15,683 bases of DNA, taken from NCBI GenBank assembly GCA_054661495.1, contig BAAFSQ010000231.1, positions 1-15,683 of the forward strand, written 5' to 3'. A program made the position numbers and the translations under genes. Each line of letters opens with the position of its first letter. Positions within the stretch are counted from its first letter, which is position 1. Below are positions 6,768 through 13,251 of this stretch, piece after piece. Below the pieces are notes generated by a model. The model was not told where the DNA came from. It was given only the letters and a program-made list of their open reading frames with translations, and did not search any database. The stretch comes from Zygophlyctis sp. KS116 (Eukaryota > Fungi > Chytridiomycota).

Positions 6768-8236
6768 CTATTTCATGTTGTTAAACGTTGCGGTCACTTT
6801 CGGACGAGCTGAAGAGCTGCTAGAATGTGTGCTTGCTGTTCCATATTTAAGATCATCATTTTTAAATTTGCGAGCTGACTTTTTTTGTTTTGAAAACTGA
6901 GATGCCGGAGTAATCCTTACACTATCGAAAGCGTTTGGTGATGGCGGGTACTCTGAGTAAATGGAAGAAGTAGTTGATTCAATGGGTGAAATTGGAGACA
7001 TTACAAAAGAAGGAATTCCATCAGATTTACCAGGACTTGGGAAATCTTTAACAGTCGAACGGCCTTGATTTTCGGCATCTGACGGATCCGTTCTCGATAT
7101 TCTGACAGAATTGTATACATCTTCAATGTTACGGTGCTTGGTTGGTGATGGTTTTGTGATTTTGACTGTATCGTAAAGACTTTGAGTATAAGATCGAGCC
7201 TTTGTTGGGATATTAATAACTATATCACTATCAGGCCTATCAATGATTGGTATAAGTTTGGAGCTGTAAAGTGACACAGCTTTGGGTTTTTGATCCTCTT
7301 TGGTAAGAGAAGATTCCCTGATAGAATGAAATATTTCACCACTAGATTTGTCAGCATCAGTGCCATCAATAGATCCAAGACAGTTTAATGGAAAACTTCC
7401 TTCGTTTTCTGTCGTTATGTTGATACCAAATCCCCATCCATCGTCAAACTTTGCCTTGACTATTATAATATCACCCATTTGCAGTTTTATTTCATCGATT
7501 AGTACAGGATGATAGTTTTGTATAACTTTCATAGTATCTTGATCCTGTGTATTATTTGAAGTGATTTGCTGGTGCCTACGACGATAAACCCATATTAAAG
7601 CACAAATTAGTAAAAGTAGACAAAAAGCGCCCATAGAAAGTCCGATTGCCAGATTTCTATTTGTAGGAGAGTTTGGTTGTGTGTTATTGGCGCTGCAGCA
7701 GCTATCTTGCGGATTGATATTTGTACAGTAGTTAGTAGCTTCATTTTGGCCTACGAATCCTATATAATTAATAATATATGTTTCCTACCACACTGTTGCC
7801 GTTCTGCAAAAAAGCCAGAAAAACAGCCATCTTCATTGGTCCGGGAATTGACCATTGCCAAATAATTATCCATTCTACTAGTGAAAGATTTTGAACATTG
7901 ATTTTTAATTAAATAATCATCAAAGGACTTTTTCGCTGTCTCTACAATATTTTTACATAGAATTGGGACTTGTTTTGTATTATTGCAGTTCTTGGCTTGA
8001 TCAGCGACAATCGATGCAATATATGCACTTGAGAAATATCTGACTTGGCCATAGTCATCATTTTTTGAGCAATTGAATGCACTTCTACCATTTTTTGCAG
8101 CAGTTCCCAGTTGCTTAAAGTATGTTTCTAGAGCTGCTTGATTTCTCACATTTGGTAATGCTATCATAATGTCATTATACTCTGCAAGAATTGTAGAGTT
8201 AACAACCTGAAAGCAAGAACCAGAGCTAGCACTCAT
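6768..8236 (-). CDS. Paralog A: Cys-rich ectodomain, one TM, SH3, long Ser/Pro-rich tail, about 479 aa; complement(join(6768..7759,7789..8236))
   Basis: A 29-nt phase-1 intron at 7760..7788 joins QQC-G-FVGQNEATNYC. TM LAIGLSMGAFCLLLLICALIWVY followed by RRR. SH3 MKVIQNYHPVLIDEIKLQMGD...FDDGWGFG...EGSFPLNCL. Confidence 0.88.
7801..8071. repeat. 271-nt direct repeat; second copy at 10249..10519 (exon 1 of paralogs A and C)
   Basis: Manual alignment at offset 2448 shows a single mismatch (7873 t versus 10321 a). Confidence 0.9.
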
Positions 8237-8255
8237 TTTATTTTTTCTTAGTTAT

Positions 8256-8294
8256 CTATAAATAGTTACGAGTAGATAGGATTACTAAAAATAG
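8256..8294. promoter_or_regulatory. Two CTA(W)4TAG (MEF2/Rlm1-type) boxes upstream of paralog A: CTATAAATAG 8256..8265 and CTAAAAATAG 8285..8294
   Basis: Exact consensus matches; the proximal box is 19 nt from the ATG. Confidence 0.55.
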
Positions 8295-8623
8295 AGCGGC
8301 AGTTTCAGTGGCCGCTTCTCACTTTACTTATCTCATACTCAGGACGATCAGCATCAGATATTCATCGAAACCTTTTTACTTAGCTATTACGGGCTACAAT
8401 GAGATATCCCTAAAACGTCTGAACAGGCCTTTTTGTCGCTCATTCAATTGGATATAATAGTAATTAATTTATCATTCTCATTCTCAGTATTTTGTGTTTT
8501 TCACATGATTAAATGTCTTGAAAAACTAGTATAAATCTGTGCAAAATTTATTTGTAATGATCTTATGTCGCATACTAGTGTGGCAGGACTTGGTTGATAA
8601 AATACTACAAGTCCGCTCCCCGA

Positions 8624-9592
8624 TTATTTTTTAAGTGAAGACATCCTTGCCGAATGAGAAGTGATCTCAATATCTTTTATGTATGAATTCTTCCGAACAT
8701 CTTGTTGAATAGATCCAAGACAGTTCAATGGGAAACTTCCTTCACTTTCTGTGGTTGTGTTGACCCCGAATCCCCATCCATCGTCAAACTTTGCCTTGAC
8801 CAAAATAAGATCACCCATGTTCAGCTGAACTTCATCTATTAATGCAGGGAAATATTCTTTGATTACTTTCATGGTTTCTTGATTGTAGCTAGATTTCTTG
8901 AAAATATTTGGTAAAAGATTGCGACGATACATCCAAATTAAAAATCCACAAAATAGCAAAATAACTGTTCCAGCTGATAGTCCGATTAAAAGATTTCTAT
9001 TCAAAGTAGAATGAGATTGTATCGGGAGGGATTTGCAGCAACTGTCTCGCGGATTAATATTTGTACAATAGTTAATGGCATCATTTTTGCCCATGAATCC
9101 TATATATTAATGCTGATATATTATACCACACTGTTGTTCTTCTATATAAAAGCCAGAGAAACATCGGGGCTGGTTCCCCTGTCCGATAATCAAATCTAAA
9201 TAGCTTTTTGAAGCTTCTACATATTGTCCCGTACACTGGTTCCTAGATACAAAATCATCAAATGTCTTCTTTGCTATTTCAGTGATATTTTTACATAATA
9301 TTGGGAATTGTTTTGTGTTACTGCAATTCTTGGCATGGATTTCCAGAACAGAAGTTATATAAGCACTTGAGAAATATCGGACTTGACCATAATCATCATT
9401 CTTTAAGCAATTGAATGCATCTTTTCCATTTTCCATTGTGTAGCCCAGATCTTTAAAATATGATTCCAGAGATGCTTGGTTTTTTATGTCTTCTGTTGAA
9501 TTGCTTATCAGAATATCATTAAATTCTGGGAGTAGTTTAGAATTCCTAACAGGAAAACAAGTACTATCAGAGGGCTGATTAGATGGATTCAT
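8624..9592 (-). CDS. Paralog B: Cys-rich ectodomain, TM, SH3, short tail, about 313 aa; complement(join(8624..9099,9127..9592))
   Basis: 27-nt phase-1 intron at 9100..9126, at the same QQC-G position as in A. TM LLIGLSAGTVILLFCGFLIWMY followed by RR. SH3 with FDDGWGFG and EGSFPLNCL. Confidence 0.88.
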
Positions 9593-9611
9593 TTATCCTA
9601 TAAACACTAGT

Positions 9612-9647
9612 CTATTAATAGTACTTATGGCTCATTGCTATATATAG
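9612..9647. promoter_or_regulatory. Two CTA(W)4TAG boxes upstream of paralog B: CTATTAATAG 9612..9621 and CTATATATAG 9638..9647
   Basis: Exact consensus matches; the proximal box is 19 nt from the ATG. Confidence 0.55.
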
Positions 9648-9768
9648 CCGCGCAACCAAATCATTAAAGGTAAAACAATACGGTCTTAATCATTTTTAAT
9701 ATACTGCATTATGATTCTATGATGATTACTTAGTCTAATTCTTTAAGAGATAACCGGAAGAAATTAAT

Positions 9769-10690
9769 TTAAAAGCTACACTGACTTGAGGGTGAACTGA
9801 ATTGGAGCTGAAGCTTTATATTTGAATGTTTAGGCGATTCTTTTGGTTGAATTTGTCCTGTAGGCGAACTTATTGCATTAGTTTTCAAAGATTGATGGTT
9901 CAAGGCATATTCGAGGCGTTTCATCCGACGATACATTACAAGTAAAATGCCGCATAGTAAAAGTAATACGAAGAGGCATATTGACAGACCGATTATTAGA
10001 TTTTTATCTTGCGAGGGGGTTGATTCTGAATTTACATTAGTTGTTTTTGGACTTGTAAGATTTTTTTGTGGAGCCATTGGTGATTTGGGATTAAAATGAC
10101 CATTCTCTACGGTAGGTTTTGATGTTGTGTTAACGATGCTGCAGCAGCTATCTTGTGGATTGGTATTTATACAGTAGTTAAAAGCTTCATTTTGGCCTAT
10201 GAATCCTGTAGTATTAAAATTCATAGTAATTCATACCACATAATCGCTGTTCTGCAAAAAAGCCAGAAAAACAGCCATCTTCATTGGTCCGGGAATTGAC
10301 CATTGCCAAATAATTATCCAATCTACTAGTGAAAGATTTTGAACATTGATTTTTAATTAAATAATCATCAAAGGACTTTTTCGCTGTCTCTACAATATTT
10401 TTACATAGAATTGGGACTTGTTTTGTATTATTGCAGTTCTTGGCTTGATCAGCGACAATCGATGCAATATATGCACTTGAGAAATATCTGACTTGGCCAT
10501 AGTCATCATTTTTTGAGCATTGGAATGCACTTCTACCATTTTTTGCAGCAGTTCCCAGTTGCTTAAAGAACGTTTCTAGAGCTGTTTGATTTCTCACATT
10601 TGGTAATGCATCACTTATCATAATGTCATCATACTCTGCAAGAATGGGAGAGTTAACAACCTGAAAGCAATTACCAGAGCTAGTGCTCAT
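9769..10690 (-). CDS. Paralog C: Cys-rich ectodomain, S/T/P stalk, TM, short SH3-less tail, about 296 aa; complement(join(9769..10205,10237..10690))
   Basis: 31-nt phase-1 intron at 10206..10236 at the shared position. Exon 1 is nearly identical to that of A. TM LIIGLSICLFVLLLLCGILLVMY followed by RR. No SH3 motifs. Confidence 0.85.
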
Positions 10691-10714
10691 TCTATATTTT
10701 CCTCTGTTCCTACT

Positions 10715-10753
10715 CTATTTTTAGATGGAATTGACTGTCCTGGCTTAAAATAG
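10715..10753. promoter_or_regulatory. CTATTTTTAG box (10715..10724) plus a one-mismatch box CTTAAAATAG (10744..10753) upstream of paralog C
   Basis: Exact match 24 nt from the ATG. The second box is offset by 29 nt, as in A. Confidence 0.5.
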
Positions 10754-10907
10754 AATACGGCTGTAATGTAGTTATTGATTCATAACTCTCTTAGTGTGTC
10801 CGATCCCTATCATAACGAATCAACTCAAAAAATCACACTGCAAACGAAGAAATTTCTATTGAAGACCAATCAAAATTAATAAGGATTGATCAATATATGT
10901 ACTCCTT

Positions 10908-11901
10908 TCAGCTAGGAAATCCATAAAGGGAGGATGCCCTTTGCTTTATTCTGGTATCCTGCTGCGTACTATATCTCTGATTAGGCGAAGCCACACATGC
11001 CATTGGGAAGCTTCCTTCCTTCTTAGAAGACATATTCATCCCATATGCCCATCCATCATCAAATTTAATCTTTACCAGAACTTGTTCGCCAACAGCTACA
11101 TATTAAAACATAATATAAATTACATAATTGAATTTCATCAAACAGATTTGGAACATATTCATAAATAACATCCATAGTCTCAAAGTCATCTTCATTTTGA
11201 TGAGGAATTACTGGCTTATCCTTACGAGATCGTTTGATACAAATAATGGCAGTAATTATAACAATTATCAGAATTGCAGAACCTACTGAAACACCAACTA
11301 TAAAGTATGTTCCTCCGATTTGAAGTTCATTTACAGAACTTGCAGGAGTAGAATTCCCTGACGATCCATTTGATTCTGATGCTAGGATGCAAGTTTTGCC
11401 AGATGGGTCGTCTATTGTAAGAGAGGAAGAGTAATTTTTCATAAATTGAGGTACTTGAAATGTACCATTGCTCTTACAAACATCCCTTTTTAACTTTTCA
11501 AATGAGTTAATTGTAGCAGCAGCATTGCTCTTACAAATCGGATTTGGAGTTTGTGCATTGCATTGAAAGCTAAGTGTGCTTGTCTGCATGATATAACCAC
11601 AGAAAAAAGCCTGAAGATTATCAATAGCTTCTTCTTTGTATTCTGGGCATCCCAATTGAGATCGGACATATGTCTGAAAGTTCTGATTGCTGGGAGAGAA
11701 ATCACTCATATACCTATCAAATGAAACTAGATTGTCAAACTGTTCCTTGCTAGGATAGACACTATATTGTGAGTACATCATGCAGGTTTTAGTCCCCTGC
11801 AGAGAGAAGCAAGATGTAGAAGGATTAGAGCTCATTGTCTGAATTCTAAAAATAACTAATCCGTAAATAGCAAGCGCCACCAAGACCGCAATGTGCAACA
11901 T
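10908..11901 (-). CDS. Paralog D (divergent): Cys-rich ectodomain, TM, SH3; about 321 aa from ATG 11901 or 299 aa from ATG 11835; complement(join(10908..11095,11124..11901))
   Basis: A 28-nt phase-1 intron at 11096..11123 inside the SH3 restores DEIQL-S-VGEQVLVKIKFDDGWAYGMNMSSKKEGSFPMACV...QRASSLYGFPS*. TM FIVGVSVGSAILIIVIITAIICI followed by KRSRK. Confidence 0.87.
11846..11855. promoter_or_regulatory. CTAAAAATAA (MEF2-type YTA(W)4TAR) 10 nt upstream of the second ATG (11835) of paralog D
   Basis: Match to the wider MEF2 consensus at a position comparable to the boxes of the other paralogs. Confidence 0.35.
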
Positions 11902-12181
11902 CTAGTCCCTGTGTAATAAAACAGATGATGTAAGTCCGGTATTATATGTACAAAGAGTATCTACTTTTTGCATGATACTACCTACTTCTTTCTCATGATC
12001 GTAGCGAATACGCAATATATATTTTTAATAGGTATTGCAATTGCTTGGCCGTTACTGATTACTAATACTAATATGGGAATTTATTTATCATTATCTCAAT
12101 ACCGAAGCCTCTTATTGAATTAATGAATTTCTGCGAACTGTCTGCTAATCAGTTGTTTAAATTGCAATTATGACATCAAAT

Positions 12182-12191
12182 CTATTTATAG
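12182..12191. promoter_or_regulatory. CTATTTATAG box upstream of paralog E
   Basis: Exact CTA(W)4TAG match 19 nt before ATG 12211. Confidence 0.55.
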
Positions 12192-12210
12192 AAGTGCCGT
12201 TTGAAATCAG

Positions 12211-13251
12211 ATGAACTCCAGCACAGCTACTGTTAGTAATTGCTTTCAGATAAAGAATTCACAAGTTCTTGGAGAGTTTAATGATTTTCAAATTGCTGAA
12301 ATGTTCCAGATAAAAAACCAGACATCTCTAGAATCATATTTTAAAGACCTTAGCTACACACTAGAAGGTGGAAAAGATGTATTTCAATGCTTAAAGACTG
12401 ATGATTATACCCAGGTCAGATACTTTTCCAGCGTTTATATTGCATGGTTTTTGGCAGAACAGGCCAGGAATTGTGATAACAAAAAACAATTGCCAATATT
12501 ATGTAAAAACATCATTGAAATAGCAAAGAAGACATTTGATGATTTTTTATCTAGAAACGAGTGTTCTAGAAATAATTCAGCCGTTGAACGAACAAGATTC
12601 GAAAACTATCTGTCAATAGTTAGCTCTAAAGGCGATCAGGATACATGCTTATCTGGTCTGTATACAGAACAAAAACAGTGTGGTATGTTATATATATTTG
12701 ATGTGTTAGGATTCTTAAAGGAAAATGATTTAAACAATTATTGCACAAATATCAATCCAGAAGATAACTGCTGCAGCTACTTTATCGTTAAACGTACAAA
12801 TTCAGTTCTTATATTCGGAGCATCTGCGGGGGCATTGCTTTTGTTTTTACTAGTTGTAACTTTTATTTTGTGTCGTCGTGGGCCCAAACGGAAAGATTCA
12901 AATACTTTCTCCGATAATGAAATGGAATTTGAATCTCAAAAGGGATCAGCTAAGGTGGAAAATATTAAAAGAGTTTCTAGTATATCTGAGCCGAATGAAT
13001 TTCGGCAGATTATAAGCGATGAAAATCTAAACCCATTGATGCTATTAGACACTCCATTGATAACTATGAAACTGGAAAAGCCAAGCGAGCATGTAGATGC
13101 TACGAAAACTTCCCAGCGATTTCCAAGTATACATCTTGACATACCAGATTCAATGGTCTCCCCGACTACACCCACCGAATATCGAAATGGTAGAGGCATG
13201 GTTAGAAAGTTTGGAAAGCAGGATAACAAATATGGATTCGTTAAGAGATAA
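12211..13251 (+). CDS. Paralog E (inverted): Cys-rich ectodomain, TM, SH3-less tail, about 337 aa spliced; join(12211..12682,12710..13251)
   Basis: DDYTQVRYFSS, LPILCKNI and YCTNINPEDNCC are shared with A, B and C. An in-frame 27-nt intron at 12683..12709 sits at the shared QC-G site. The tail RKFGKQDNKYG aligns with RKFKNDDLKYG in A. Confidence 0.88.
   Translation: MNSSTATVSNCFQIKNSQVLGEFNDFQIAEMFQIKNQTSLESYFKDLSYTLEGGKDVFQCLKTDDYTQVRYFSSVYIAWFLAEQARNCDNKKQLPILCKNIIEIAKKTFDDFLSRNECSRNNSAVERTRFENYLSIVSSKGDQDTCLSGLYTEQKQCGMLYIFDVLGFLKENDLNNYCTNINPEDNCCSYFIVKRTNSVLIFGASAGALLLFLLVVTFILCRRGPKRKDSNTFSDNEMEFESQKGSAKVENIKRVSSISEPNEFRQIISDENLNPLMLLDTPLITMKLEKPSEHVDATKTSQRFPSIHLDIPDSMVSPTTPTEYRNGRGMVRKFGKQDNKYGFVKR

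What the first reader, a model, noticed from the sequence alone, without database searches (positions are those of the whole stretch)
6768..13251. Five-gene cluster of receptor-like Cys-rich/TM/(SH3) proteins with shared sensor domains and variable cytoplasmic outputs
Seen: five homologous single-pass membrane proteins (A-D on minus, E inverted on plus). A, B, C and E share CF...F.C.K.DDY.QVRYFSS...C....Q.PILCKNI...C...C.SG...E...CG...YC.N.NP.D.CC and one intron position. The cytoplasmic sides differ: A has SH3 plus a long tail, B and D have SH3 plus a short tail, C and E have no SH3. Known: TM plus cytoplasmic SH3 is the architecture of fungal surface signalling proteins such as Fus1 and Sho1. 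Inference: this is a locally expanded sensor family in which signalling (SH3+) and decoy or modulating (SH3-) members share a ligand-binding domain, like paired receptors. The Cys spacing and P(I/L)C motif suggest a Frizzled-CRD-like fold, which is unverified.
Basis: partly seen in the sequence, partly recalled or inferred. Interest (0 to 1): 0.8.

Follow-up and report, generated by a model that had tools for sequence, protein, structure and literature searches.

The report
Chytrid Frizzled-like, Fus1-type receptor cluster
Five neighbouring genes of a lake chytrid fungus encode single-pass surface proteins whose outer part is predicted to fold like the ligand-binding domain of animal Frizzled receptors and whose inner part usually carries a docking (SH3) domain resembling that of the yeast mating protein Fus1. 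They belong to a large, unnamed family found across fungi.

Summary
Window 6768-13251 carries five paralogous genes (A-D on minus, E on plus). Each has a Cys-rich N-terminal domain and one transmembrane helix. A, B and D also have a cytoplasmic SH3 domain; C and E have none. A, B, C and E share one phase-1 intron of 27-31 nt.

The cluster is not a local novelty. A profile of the ectodomain finds 455 clusters (at 50% identity). All named members are "hypothetical" or "SH3 domain-containing" proteins from chytrids, Ramicandelaber and Pezizomycotina. At least six more members lie elsewhere in this genome.

The family SH3 carries Leu14 and Cys54, which only Fus1 shows among the yeast SH3 domains compared. 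Half of the SH3-bearing members also carry an R-x-S-S-L motif like the Fus1-SH3 ligand.

A, B, C and E form a young clade that lost two disulfides and has no visible signal peptide. D is an old paralogue. SH3-less C is under purifying selection (dN/dS about 0.3). Decoy or "paired receptor" function is untested.

No earlier scan note on other DNA describes this family.

The parts
6768..8236 (-). Gene A. Exon 1 (8236-7789) encodes the CRD. Intron 7788-7760. Exon 2 (7759-6768) encodes the 4-Cys juxtamembrane module, TM helix (7649-7587), SH3 (about 7538-7365), an R-E-S-S-L motif and a tail of about 200 aa.
   Evidence: Pfam SH3_9 scores 31.7 bits.
8624..9592 (-). Gene B. Exon 1 9592-9127, intron 9126-9100, exon 2 9099-8624. 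TM helix 8992-8930, SH3 8887-8693, and R-M-S-S-L three residues before the stop.
   Evidence: SH3_9 E-value 6e-6.
9769..10690 (-). Gene C, which has no SH3. Exon 1 10690-10237, intron 10236-10206, exon 2 10205-9769. It has an extra stretch of about 31 aa before the TM helix (9999-9937) and a 55-aa tail.
   Evidence: dN/dS against the sister-species copy is 0.35 and 0.31.
10908..11901 (-). Gene D, an old paralogue. Exon 1 runs from 11901 (or, more likely, from the Met at 11835) to 11124. Intron 11123-11096 lies inside the SH3. Exon 2 is 11095-10908. TM helix 11304-11242. SH3 about 11181-10950. R-A-S-S-L lies near the C-terminus. There is no juxtamembrane Cys module.
   Evidence: The orthologue P0004 starts at the second Met.
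12211..13251 (+). Gene E, which has no SH3. Exon 1 12211-12682. The 27-nt intron 12683-12709 is in frame and has no stop codon. Exon 2 12710-13251. TM helix 12805-12867. The tail keeps R-V-S-S-I.
   Evidence: The orthologue P0001 is 85% identical. The AF2 model of residues 1-195 has pLDDT 85.4.
7672..8247 (-). Tract of A that is 91.6% identical in DNA to C (10118-10701). It covers 11 nt upstream of the start, exon 1, the intron and the first 88 nt or so of exon 2. Beyond it A resembles B (70.7% over 877 nt).
   Evidence: C exon 1 is closer to A (93% aa) than to its own orthologue (85%).
8256..12191 (.). Six CTA(W)4TAG boxes just upstream of the starts of A (8256, 8285), B (9612, 9638), C (10715) and E (12182).
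   Evidence: 7 boxes in the window against 0.61 expected, and 0 of 200 shuffles reach 7. Boxes also lie upstream of F, H, I, K and the E orthologue.

Best explanation
SHOWN. The five genes encode N-out, single-pass membrane proteins of a large, unnamed fungal family. The canonical architecture has these parts:
- a signal peptide;
- a 10-Cys helical domain with Frizzled-type CRD topology;
- a 4-Cys juxtamembrane module (C-G-F...Y-C...C-C);
- one TM helix and a disordered tail;
- a non-canonical SH3 domain (small residue at position 37, Cys at position 54, Leu at position 14);
- often an R-x-S-S-L motif near the C-terminus.

A, B, C and E, together with F on another contig, form a chytrid-specific clade. 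This clade lost two CRD disulfides (C2-C4 and C7-C9) and has no visible signal peptide. Three of its five members in this genome (C, E, F) lost the SH3. D is an old paralogue that happens to sit next to them.

INFERRED. The proteins sit in the plasma membrane with the CRD outside. The CRD binds an extracellular ligand; by analogy with Fz, Smo and ROR CRDs this would be a lipid- or sterol-like molecule or a protein. The SH3 tethers cortical polarity, actin or MAPK-scaffold proteins, as Fus1 does in yeast. It may use R-x-S-S-L-type, non-PxxP ligands, including the motif in the family's own tails, in cis or between paralogues. SH3-less members keep the CRD and TM helix, and E keeps the motif, so they most likely modulate SH3-bearing partners by competing for ligand or by offering SH3 ligands. 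The shared MEF2/Rlm1-type box suggests the genes are co-regulated.
For: Family:
- The ectodomain profile finds 455 representatives at E<=1e-3.
- SH3 is present in 70 of 87 long members.
- Named members are chytrids and Ramicandelaber, plus Pezizomycotina with 84-94 bits to the ectodomain-only profile.

Fold:
- The AF2 model has pLDDT 85.4 and pTM 0.81, with a beta-hairpin followed by four long helices.
- In the second look, 25 of the top 26 rows are Fz, Smo, ROR or MuSK CRDs.
- The ESM Atlas gives TM 0.66 to Ascomycota "SH3 domain-containing" clusters and weaker matches to Mid1, carboxypeptidase Z and corin Fz domains.

Cysteines:
- C2/C4 are both present in 77 members, both absent in 17 and discordant in 0.
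- C7/C9 are both present in 56, both absent in 38 and discordant in 0.
- The C6-x3-C7 spacing is invariant.
- This matches the Fz connectivity C2-C4 and C7-C9 and its CX3C element (PMC4256011).

SH3:
- Pfam matches; PDB SH3 matches.
- Position 37 is Ala or Gly in 78 of 82 members. Position 54 is Cys in 58 of 82. R-x-S-S-[LIMVF] follows the SH3 in 41 of 82, against about 5 of 82 at any position in shuffled sequences.
- Fus1 has Cys at positions 37 and 54 (PMC5823434). It is the only one of 28 yeast SH3 domains with Leu14.
- The Fus1 SH3 binds R(S/T)(S/T)SL (PMC4908317).

Topology: the positive-inside rule holds.

Selection: dN/dS is 0.35/0.31 for C, 0.26/0.12 for D and 0.40/0.73 for E.

Clade structure.
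Against: - Foldseek E-values are about 1.
- Pfam Fz, and a family profile searched against PDB sequences, give no match.
- Cys spacings other than CX3C differ from the Fz pattern.
- The A/B/C/E clade has no signal peptide. Translocating a 190-aa N-terminal domain would then need signal-anchor insertion or an unseen 5' exon.
- No Fus1 sequence could be aligned by reference, so the Fus1 link rests on a few signature positions. A's N-terminal SH3 half is as identical to yeast Bzz1 SH3-2 (15 of 35 by eye) as it is to Fus1.
- There is no expression, localisation or binding data.
- E's tail evolves almost neutrally (0.73, on small counts).
Confidence: 0.6

Rival explanations
1. The family is the ancestral, CRD-bearing form of the Fus1 cell-fusion scaffold. 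On this reading its main job is polarised secretion or cell fusion (for example gamete or zoospore events in chytrids) rather than sensing a diffusible ligand. Yeast Fus1 and the Ser/Thr-rich Dikarya forms would be descendants that lost the CRD.
For: - The topology and the C-terminal SH3 are the same as in Fus1 (PMC2063912).
- Leu14 and Cys54 are shared only with Fus1 among yeast SH3 domains.
- The family R-x-S-S-L motif resembles the Fus1 ligand R(S/T)(S/T)SL.
- The full-length family profile also pulls CRD-less Dikarya proteins (Ser/Thr-rich ectodomain, TM helix, SH3) that have Cys54: P0167-P0170 at E 8e-19 to 1.5e-6.
- Member J of this genome has a CRD plus a long mucin-like stalk.
- A Eurotiales TM-SH3 protein is treated as a Fus1 homologue in PMC10315666.
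- An Atlas lead points to a 510-aa Kluyveromyces SH3 cluster, at a score of only 0.81.
Against: - Fus1 itself was never aligned here.
- The signature rests on three positions.
- SH3 domains converge easily.
- Eleven or more paralogues per genome is unlike the single-copy FUS1.
- Sexual fusion in this chytrid is undocumented.
Confidence: 0.4
2. The ectodomain is a generic disulfide-stapled helical domain unrelated to Frizzled CRDs. On this reading the proteins act as cell-wall or mechanical-stress sensors or adhesins, like Wsc1 and Mid2, with the SH3 linking them to the cortex.
For: - One family member weakly matches Pfam Mid2, and several have mucin-like stalks.
- The upstream CTA(W)4TAG box is the consensus of the yeast wall-integrity factor Rlm1 (my own knowledge), and it is enriched here.
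Against: - The top-ranked structural matches come from one fold family and cover whole CRDs.
- Two cysteine pairs are lost only as pairs, matching the Fz disulfide map.
- A wall-sensor role does not exclude an Fz-type fold.
Confidence: 0.2
3. The SH3-less copies (C, E) are duplicates on their way to loss and have no function of their own.
For: - E exon 2 has dN/dS 0.73.
- An E-like copy on contig C783 is broken into fragments.
- SH3 loss recurs in the family: 17 of 87 long members lack it.
Against: - C and E have intact reading frames in two species.
- dN/dS is 0.31-0.35 for C and 0.40 for the E ectodomain.
- C's ectodomain is kept like A's over a 92%-identical tract.
- Both genes keep the upstream box.
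Confidence: 0.1

Closest known systems
Frizzled-type cysteine-rich domains (FZD, Smoothened, ROR2, MuSK, sFRP; Pfam PF01392; ECOD FZ-CRD group)
   Same: - An N-terminal beta-hairpin followed by four core helices.
- Ten cysteines in the same order, with an invariant C6-x3-C7.
- Pair losses that fit the C2-C4 and C7-C9 disulfides.
- They are the best structural matches.
   Different: - There is no Pfam or profile match.
- The C3-C4, C4-C5 and C7-C8 spacings are longer.
- An extra 4-Cys juxtamembrane module is present.
- The domain is attached to a single TM helix and an SH3, not to a 7TM bundle, a kinase or a netrin domain.
- The A/B/C/E clade keeps only three of the five disulfides.
Saccharomyces cerevisiae Fus1 (cell-fusion scaffold)
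   Same: - N-out single-pass membrane protein with a long cytoplasmic tail and an SH3 near the C-terminus.
- A non-canonical SH3 surface: Cys54, a non-aromatic residue at 37 and Leu14.
- A ligand-like R-x-S-S-L motif.
   Different: - Fus1 has a short, Cys-free, O-glycosylated ectodomain and no CRD.
- Fus1 is single-copy and pheromone-induced.
- Homology outside the signature positions was not tested here.
Sho1 (osmosensor adaptor)
   Same: A membrane protein with a cytoplasmic C-terminal SH3.
   Different: Sho1 has four TM helices, no ectodomain and a canonical PxxP-binding SH3. The proteins here have one TM helix.
Mid1 / FAM155 CRD (Ca2+/NALCN channel subunit)
   Same: A fungal extracellular Cys-rich domain already classed as a divergent Fz-CRD (Pei and Grishin 2012, as cited). 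It gives a weak Atlas match (TM 0.39).
   Different: There is no PF12929 match and no SH3. Mid1 has a different architecture and partner (Cch1).
Paired activating/inhibitory receptors of animal immune cells
   Same: Near-identical ectodomains on neighbouring genes with different cytoplasmic parts, kept alike by sequence exchange (A versus C).
   Different: No opposing signalling motifs are known here. The analogy is one of gene architecture only.

Membership tests
Frizzled-type CRD (PF01392 / ECOD FZ-CRD) | Match to the Pfam Fz profile | tested here: not met
   No Fz hit at E<=1 for any exon of A-E or for members G-K. None among 87 long members at E<=1e-3. The family profile against PDB sequences finds no CRD.
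Frizzled-type CRD (PF01392 / ECOD FZ-CRD) | Fold: N-terminal strands plus four core helices | tested here: met
Frizzled-type CRD (PF01392 / ECOD FZ-CRD) | Ten-Cys pattern C*C*CX8CX6C*CX3CX6,7C*C*C | tested here: inconclusive
   Ten cysteines occur in the same order and CX3C is invariant (56 of 56). But C3-C4 is mostly x15, C4-C5 is x10-12 and C7-C8 is x16.
Frizzled-type CRD (PF01392 / ECOD FZ-CRD) | Disulfides C1-C5, C2-C4, C3-C8, C6-C10, C7-C9 | tested here: inconclusive
   C2/C4 and C7/C9 are lost only together (0 discordant of 94, with at least two independent losses each). The other three pairs never vary, so they could not be tested.
SH3 domain (PF00018 / PF14604) | Profile match in the cytoplasmic part | tested here: met
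   A: SH3_9 at 31.7 bits, above the cut-off. B: E 6e-6, below the cut-off. D: two halves split by an intron. C and E have none.
Fus1 | N-out single-pass topology with an SH3 near the C-terminus | tested here: met
   One TM helix, positive-inside flanks and an SH3 after the TM helix in A, B and D. Fus1 description.
Fus1 | Non-canonical SH3 surface (Cys at positions 37 and 54) | tested here: inconclusive
   Cys54 is present in A, B, D and in 58 of 82 members. Position 37 is Ala or Gly, not Cys. Leu14 is shared only with Fus1 among 28 yeast SH3 domains.
Fus1 | Sequence homology to Fus1 over the SH3 and tail | not tested
   No Fus1 sequence was available by reference. I only compared by eye with the first 37 SH3 positions printed in a paper's supplement: 15 of 35 identical, the same count as for Bzz1 SH3-2.
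Fus1 | Short Ser/Thr-rich, Cys-free ectodomain | tested here: not met
   The ectodomains here are folded domains of about 190 aa with 8-10 cysteines.
Sho1 | Four transmembrane helices before the SH3 | tested here: not met
   There is a single hydrophobic helix per protein.
Mid1 (PF12929) | Match to the Mid1 profile | tested here: not met
   No Pfam hit. No PF12929 match in the genome search, although the control genomes did not match either.

The most novel reading that the evidence does not exclude
Fungi have their own class of Frizzled-CRD receptors: a CRD, one TM helix and a Fus1-type SH3. The class is ancestral to fungi, multi-copy in chytrids and retained in Pezizomycotina. [quoted passage not shown] The SH3 would bind the family's own R-x-S-S-L tail motif, so that SH3-less, motif-bearing paralogues such as E act as trans-regulators of SH3-bearing ones.
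Probability: 0.3. Interest if true: 0.8.

Novelty: new variant of a known kind. Interest (0 to 1): 0.62.

Why it matters
- Frizzled-type CRDs are best known as lipid- and sterol-binding sensor domains of animal development. In fungi only Mid1 and a few chytrid 7TM Frizzled-like genes have been linked to them.
- A pan-fungal family that joins such a domain to an SH3 scaffold would be an undescribed class of fungal surface receptor.
- The possible link to Fus1 gives a testable origin for a long-studied yeast protein whose extracellular part is featureless.
- The chytrid cluster shows step-wise loss of disulfides, signal peptide and SH3, with sequence exchange between an SH3-bearing and an SH3-less copy. 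That makes it a natural series for asking what each part contributes.
- Orthologues exist in Spizellomyces punctatus (SPPG_07058, SPPG_08330), which to my knowledge can be transformed.

Tried and rejected
- Word search with E found only an 85%-identical metagenome orthologue. Word search with the ectodomain of member J found nothing. Only the full HMM search opened the family.
- The first AF2 model (member G, 12-sequence alignment) had pLDDT 64.7, and its Foldseek matches were meaningless.
- Foldseek against the PDB with the good model gave no match at E<=1e-3.
- The family profile against PDB sequences gave no relevant hit.
- Searches for PF01392 and PF12929 in this genome found nothing, and the controls also found nothing, so this is uninformative. 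It meant I had no Fz sequences for a profile-profile test.
- I looked for a signal-peptide exon upstream of A, B, C and E and found none. Stop codons lie in all frames, and the 19 nt after the box in A carry an in-frame TAA.
- D's upstream hydrophobic extension is not kept in its orthologue's called protein.
- Complex prediction on the A SH3 against the following 45 residues (with R-E-S-S-L) gave no verdict. It is evidence neither for nor against binding.
- Synteny beyond C in the sister-species contig ends in a dispersed repeat. I cannot say whether A and B are absent there.
- Literature searches for a described fungal CRD-TM-SH3 family found nothing. Pei and Grishin 2012 (PMC3537238) and Trueheart and Fink 1989 (PMC298613) are not held, so an earlier description cannot be excluded.
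All searches were run exon by exon, by reference. E was used as its natural read-through ORF, which adds nine intron-encoded residues (159-167) to the model.


Full report
**Setting.** The window is contig C231 of a 12.7-Mb, 1175-contig assembly. Earlier notes of this scan call it a lake chytrid. GC content is about 35%. The flanking genes are ordinary: a chitin synthase, a protein kinase, an EF-G/TypA-like GTPase and a cNMP-binding protein.

**Gene models.** Six-frame translation and the junction sequences give five genes.
- A, B, C and E each have a GT...AG intron of 27-31 nt in phase 1, inside the Gly codon of a C-G|F junction.
- In A, B and C the reading frame changes across the intron.
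- In E the 27-nt intron is in frame and has no stop codon, so E reads as a single 346-aa ORF.
- Splicing recreates the C-G-F junction, which is contiguous in annotated full-length homologues from other chytrids.
- D lacks this intron. It has a 28-nt intron inside its SH3, and splicing there restores the family SH3 consensus.
Every search used exon references or E's read-through ORF.

**Checking the observation.**
C is 93% identical to A, B 56%, E 51% and D 25%.
- Pfam finds an SH3 in A and B and half of one in D's second exon. It finds none in C or E, and there is no SH3 relic in the DNA near them.
- Each protein has one strong hydrophobic helix with basic residues on its C-terminal side.
- None of A, B, C or E has a signal peptide, and no upstream exon that could supply one is visible.
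- D's in-frame hydrophobic extension upstream of the Met that aligns with the other starts is not part of the sister-species protein P0004.
- The clade's relatives in other species also begin M-S...C. I therefore treat the lack of a signal peptide as real but unresolved. It implies either signal-anchor insertion or an unseen 5' exon.

**The family is large.**
- Searching this genome with E, G and D found six further members on other contigs, here called F to K. It also found fragments of an E-like copy.
- G, H, I and J have clear signal peptides. G, H and J have an SH3. J is a single 514-aa exon with a CRD, a long Gln/Pro/Ser-rich stalk, a TM helix and an SH3.
- A profile of 12 ectodomains searched against 1.84 billion representatives gave 455 hits at E<=1e-3 and 119 at E<=1e-10.
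- The named hits are all "hypothetical" or "SH3 domain-containing" proteins. They come from Spizellomyces, Gaertneriomyces, Synchytrium, Chytriomyces, Rhizophlyctis, Cladochytrium, Entophlyctis, Polychytrium and others, and from the kickxellomycete Ramicandelaber.
- Of 87 members with at least 300 aa, 70 have a Pfam SH3 and none has another recurrent domain.
- A word search with the full-length alignment added Pezizomycotina proteins of 586-644 aa from Trichoderma, Diplocarpon and Cadophora. These score 84-94 bits against the ectodomain-only profile.
- Many short database entries are exon-1 ORFs that run into the intron after C-G. This shows that the intron position is shared widely among chytrids.

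**Fold of the ectodomain.**
- With a 94-sequence alignment, AlphaFold2 models residues 1-195 of E at pLDDT 85.4 and pTM 0.81. The model has two short strands followed by four long helices. Confidence is low only at the nine intron-encoded residues.
- Foldseek finds nothing significant, though Smo, FZD and ROR2 CRDs recur among its weak rows.
- In the second-look search, 25 of the top 26 entries are Fz, Smo, ROR or MuSK CRDs, aligned over nearly their whole length.
- The ESM Atlas search gives TM 0.66 to three Ascomycota "SH3 domain-containing protein" clusters. It gives weaker matches to Mid1 and to the Fz domains of carboxypeptidase Z and corin.

**Independent sequence evidence for the fold.**
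- The family has 14 conserved cysteine columns.
- Across 94 aligned members, C2 and C4 are both present in 77 and both absent in 17. C7 and C9 are both present in 56 and both absent in 38. There is no discordant case.
- On the tree each pair was lost at least twice.
- Frizzled CRDs pair C1-C5, C2-C4, C3-C8, C6-C10 and C7-C9, and have a CX3C between C6 and C7 (PMC4256011).
- The family's C6-x3-C7 is invariant.
- The A/B/C/E/F clade has lost exactly C2, C4, C7 and C9. D and K have lost C7 and C9.
- The other spacings differ from the Fz pattern, and Pfam Fz does not match.
- I therefore call this a divergent Fz-type CRD by fold and disulfide logic, not by profile membership.
- C11-C14 form a separate juxtamembrane module. 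It is absent from D and J.

**The SH3 and the Fus1 lead.**
- The SH3 is genuine. Its PDB sequence matches include vinexin, sorbin and Sla1 SH3 domains.
- Its binding surface is unusual. Position 37 is Ala or Gly in 78 of 82 members, and position 54 is Cys in 58 of 82. A, B and D read F-P-L/M-x-C at this site.
- A paper on yeast SH3 domains singles out Fus1 for having Cys at positions 37 and 54 (PMC5823434).
- In that paper's alignment of 28 yeast SH3 domains, only Fus1 has Leu at position 14 within Y-x-P-x-L-x-D-E. This is a family consensus here.
- Half of the SH3-bearing members (41 of 82) have R-x-S-S-[LIMVF] downstream of the SH3, against about 5 of 82 at any position in shuffled sequences. 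A has R-E-S-S-L, B has R-M-S-S-L, D has R-A-S-S-L, and SH3-less E has R-V-S-S-I.
- The Fus1 SH3 binds R(S/T)(S/T)SL rather than PxxP (PMC4908317).
- The family profile also retrieved Dikarya proteins with a Ser/Thr-rich, Cys-free ectodomain, one TM helix and an SH3 with Cys54 (P0167-P0170). This is the Fus1 architecture. A Eurotiales TM-SH3 protein has been published as a Fus1 homologue.
- These are leads, not proof. Fus1 itself could not be aligned by reference. Overall identity of A's first 35 SH3 positions is 15 of 35 to Fus1 and also 15 of 35 to Bzz1 SH3-2, counted by eye.

**Evolution of the cluster.**
- A quick maximum-likelihood tree of 94 ectodomains puts A, B, C, E and F, with five metagenome relatives, in one clade (SH-aLRT 99, long stem). 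D falls in a different, widespread clade.
- A and C share a 584-nt tract of 91.6% identity that includes the intron and ends about 88 nt into exon 2. Beyond it A resembles B.
- C's ectodomain is closer to A (93%) than to its own orthologue in a sister species (85%). This fits gene conversion or a recent chimeric duplication.
- Metagenome contigs from a sister species carry orthologues of D plus C (L022) and of E (L001) at about 90% DNA identity.
- Nei-Gojobori dN/dS, computed exon by exon, is 0.35 and 0.31 for C, 0.26 and 0.12 for D, and 0.40 and 0.73 for E. Counts are small.
- SH3-less C is thus under purifying selection. E's ectodomain is constrained and its tail much less so.
- In the alignment, E looks like an A-type gene with the SH3 core deleted between E-I-K and R-x-S-S. 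It shares a weak C-terminal R-K-F...K-Y-G motif with A.

**Regulation.** The palindrome-like box CTA(W)4TAG occurs 7 times in the window against 0.61 expected. Six copies lie 19-50 nt upstream of the starts of A, B, C and E. It also precedes F, H, I, K and the E orthologue. This is the MEF2/Rlm1 consensus (my own knowledge). Its closeness to the ATG leaves open whether it is a core-promoter element or the 3' end of a 5'-UTR intron.

**Verdict.** The Frizzled-like guess is supported at the level of fold and disulfide pattern. The "paired receptor/decoy" idea remains a reasonable but untested inference. The binding test I tried gave no verdict.

Noticed in passing
window 8256-8265, 8285-8294, 9612-9621, 9638-9647, 10715-10724, 12182-12191; also L006:1412 and 1447, L020:1481 and 1512, L016:2035, L015:105, L001:190: CTA(W)4TAG boxes (the MEF2/Rlm1 consensus) lie just upstream of 8 of the 11 family genes. 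In A, B and E one box sits exactly 19 nt before the ATG, although the 19 nt themselves are unrelated. The window holds 7 boxes against 0.61 expected. The box could be a transcription-factor site, a core-promoter element or a 3' splice site of a 5'-UTR intron.
   Followed up: partly
window 7672-8247 versus 10118-10701: A and C share a 584-nt tract of 91.6% identity that includes the intron. A is a mosaic: a C-like ectodomain joined to a B-like SH3 part.
   Followed up: yes
L008 (G000 contig C783): 1492-1587 (-) and 73-243 (+): Fragments of an E-like copy: the first 31 codons (83% identical) with E-like upstream DNA, and the last 32 codons or so on the other strand. An unrelated 186-aa ORF with a signal peptide and a TM helix lies between them. 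This looks like a rearranged, dead copy.
   Followed up: no
L022:2440-2570 (sister-species contig); at least 13 places in G000: A dispersed repeat of about 130 nt, 83-95% identical between copies, sits exactly where synteny with the window ends after the C orthologue.
   Followed up: partly
window 12683-12709 and database proteins such as P0002, P0003, P0005, P0007, P0008: The introns are only 27-31 nt long. Gene callers built for prokaryotes read through them or stop inside them. As a result many public "proteins" of this family are exon-1 ORFs that end with a few intron-encoded residues after C-G.
   Followed up: partly
window 11836-11901: D has an in-frame upstream ATG followed by a 22-codon hydrophobic extension that looks like a signal peptide. 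The sister-species protein P0004 starts at the second Met, so the extension may not be translated.
   Followed up: partly
L023 (NCBI GCA_031546785.1 contig): 799-1263 and 1522-1764: Downstream of a clade relative (P0008) there are two separate SH3-like stretches. They could belong to one gene with two SH3 domains or to two tandem genes.
   Followed up: no
proteins P0085 and P0092: Automatic database names ("DOMON domain-containing protein frrs1L" and "CFEM domain-containing protein") are attached to family members. My Pfam scan of the 87 long members found neither domain among the families matched.
   Followed up: partly
Chytriomyces hyalinus proteins (locus tags HDU77_009601/009602, HDU78_004689/004690, HDU81_006313/006314): Family members carry consecutive locus tags in three assemblies, so tandem pairs of this family also occur in another chytrid.
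   Followed up: no
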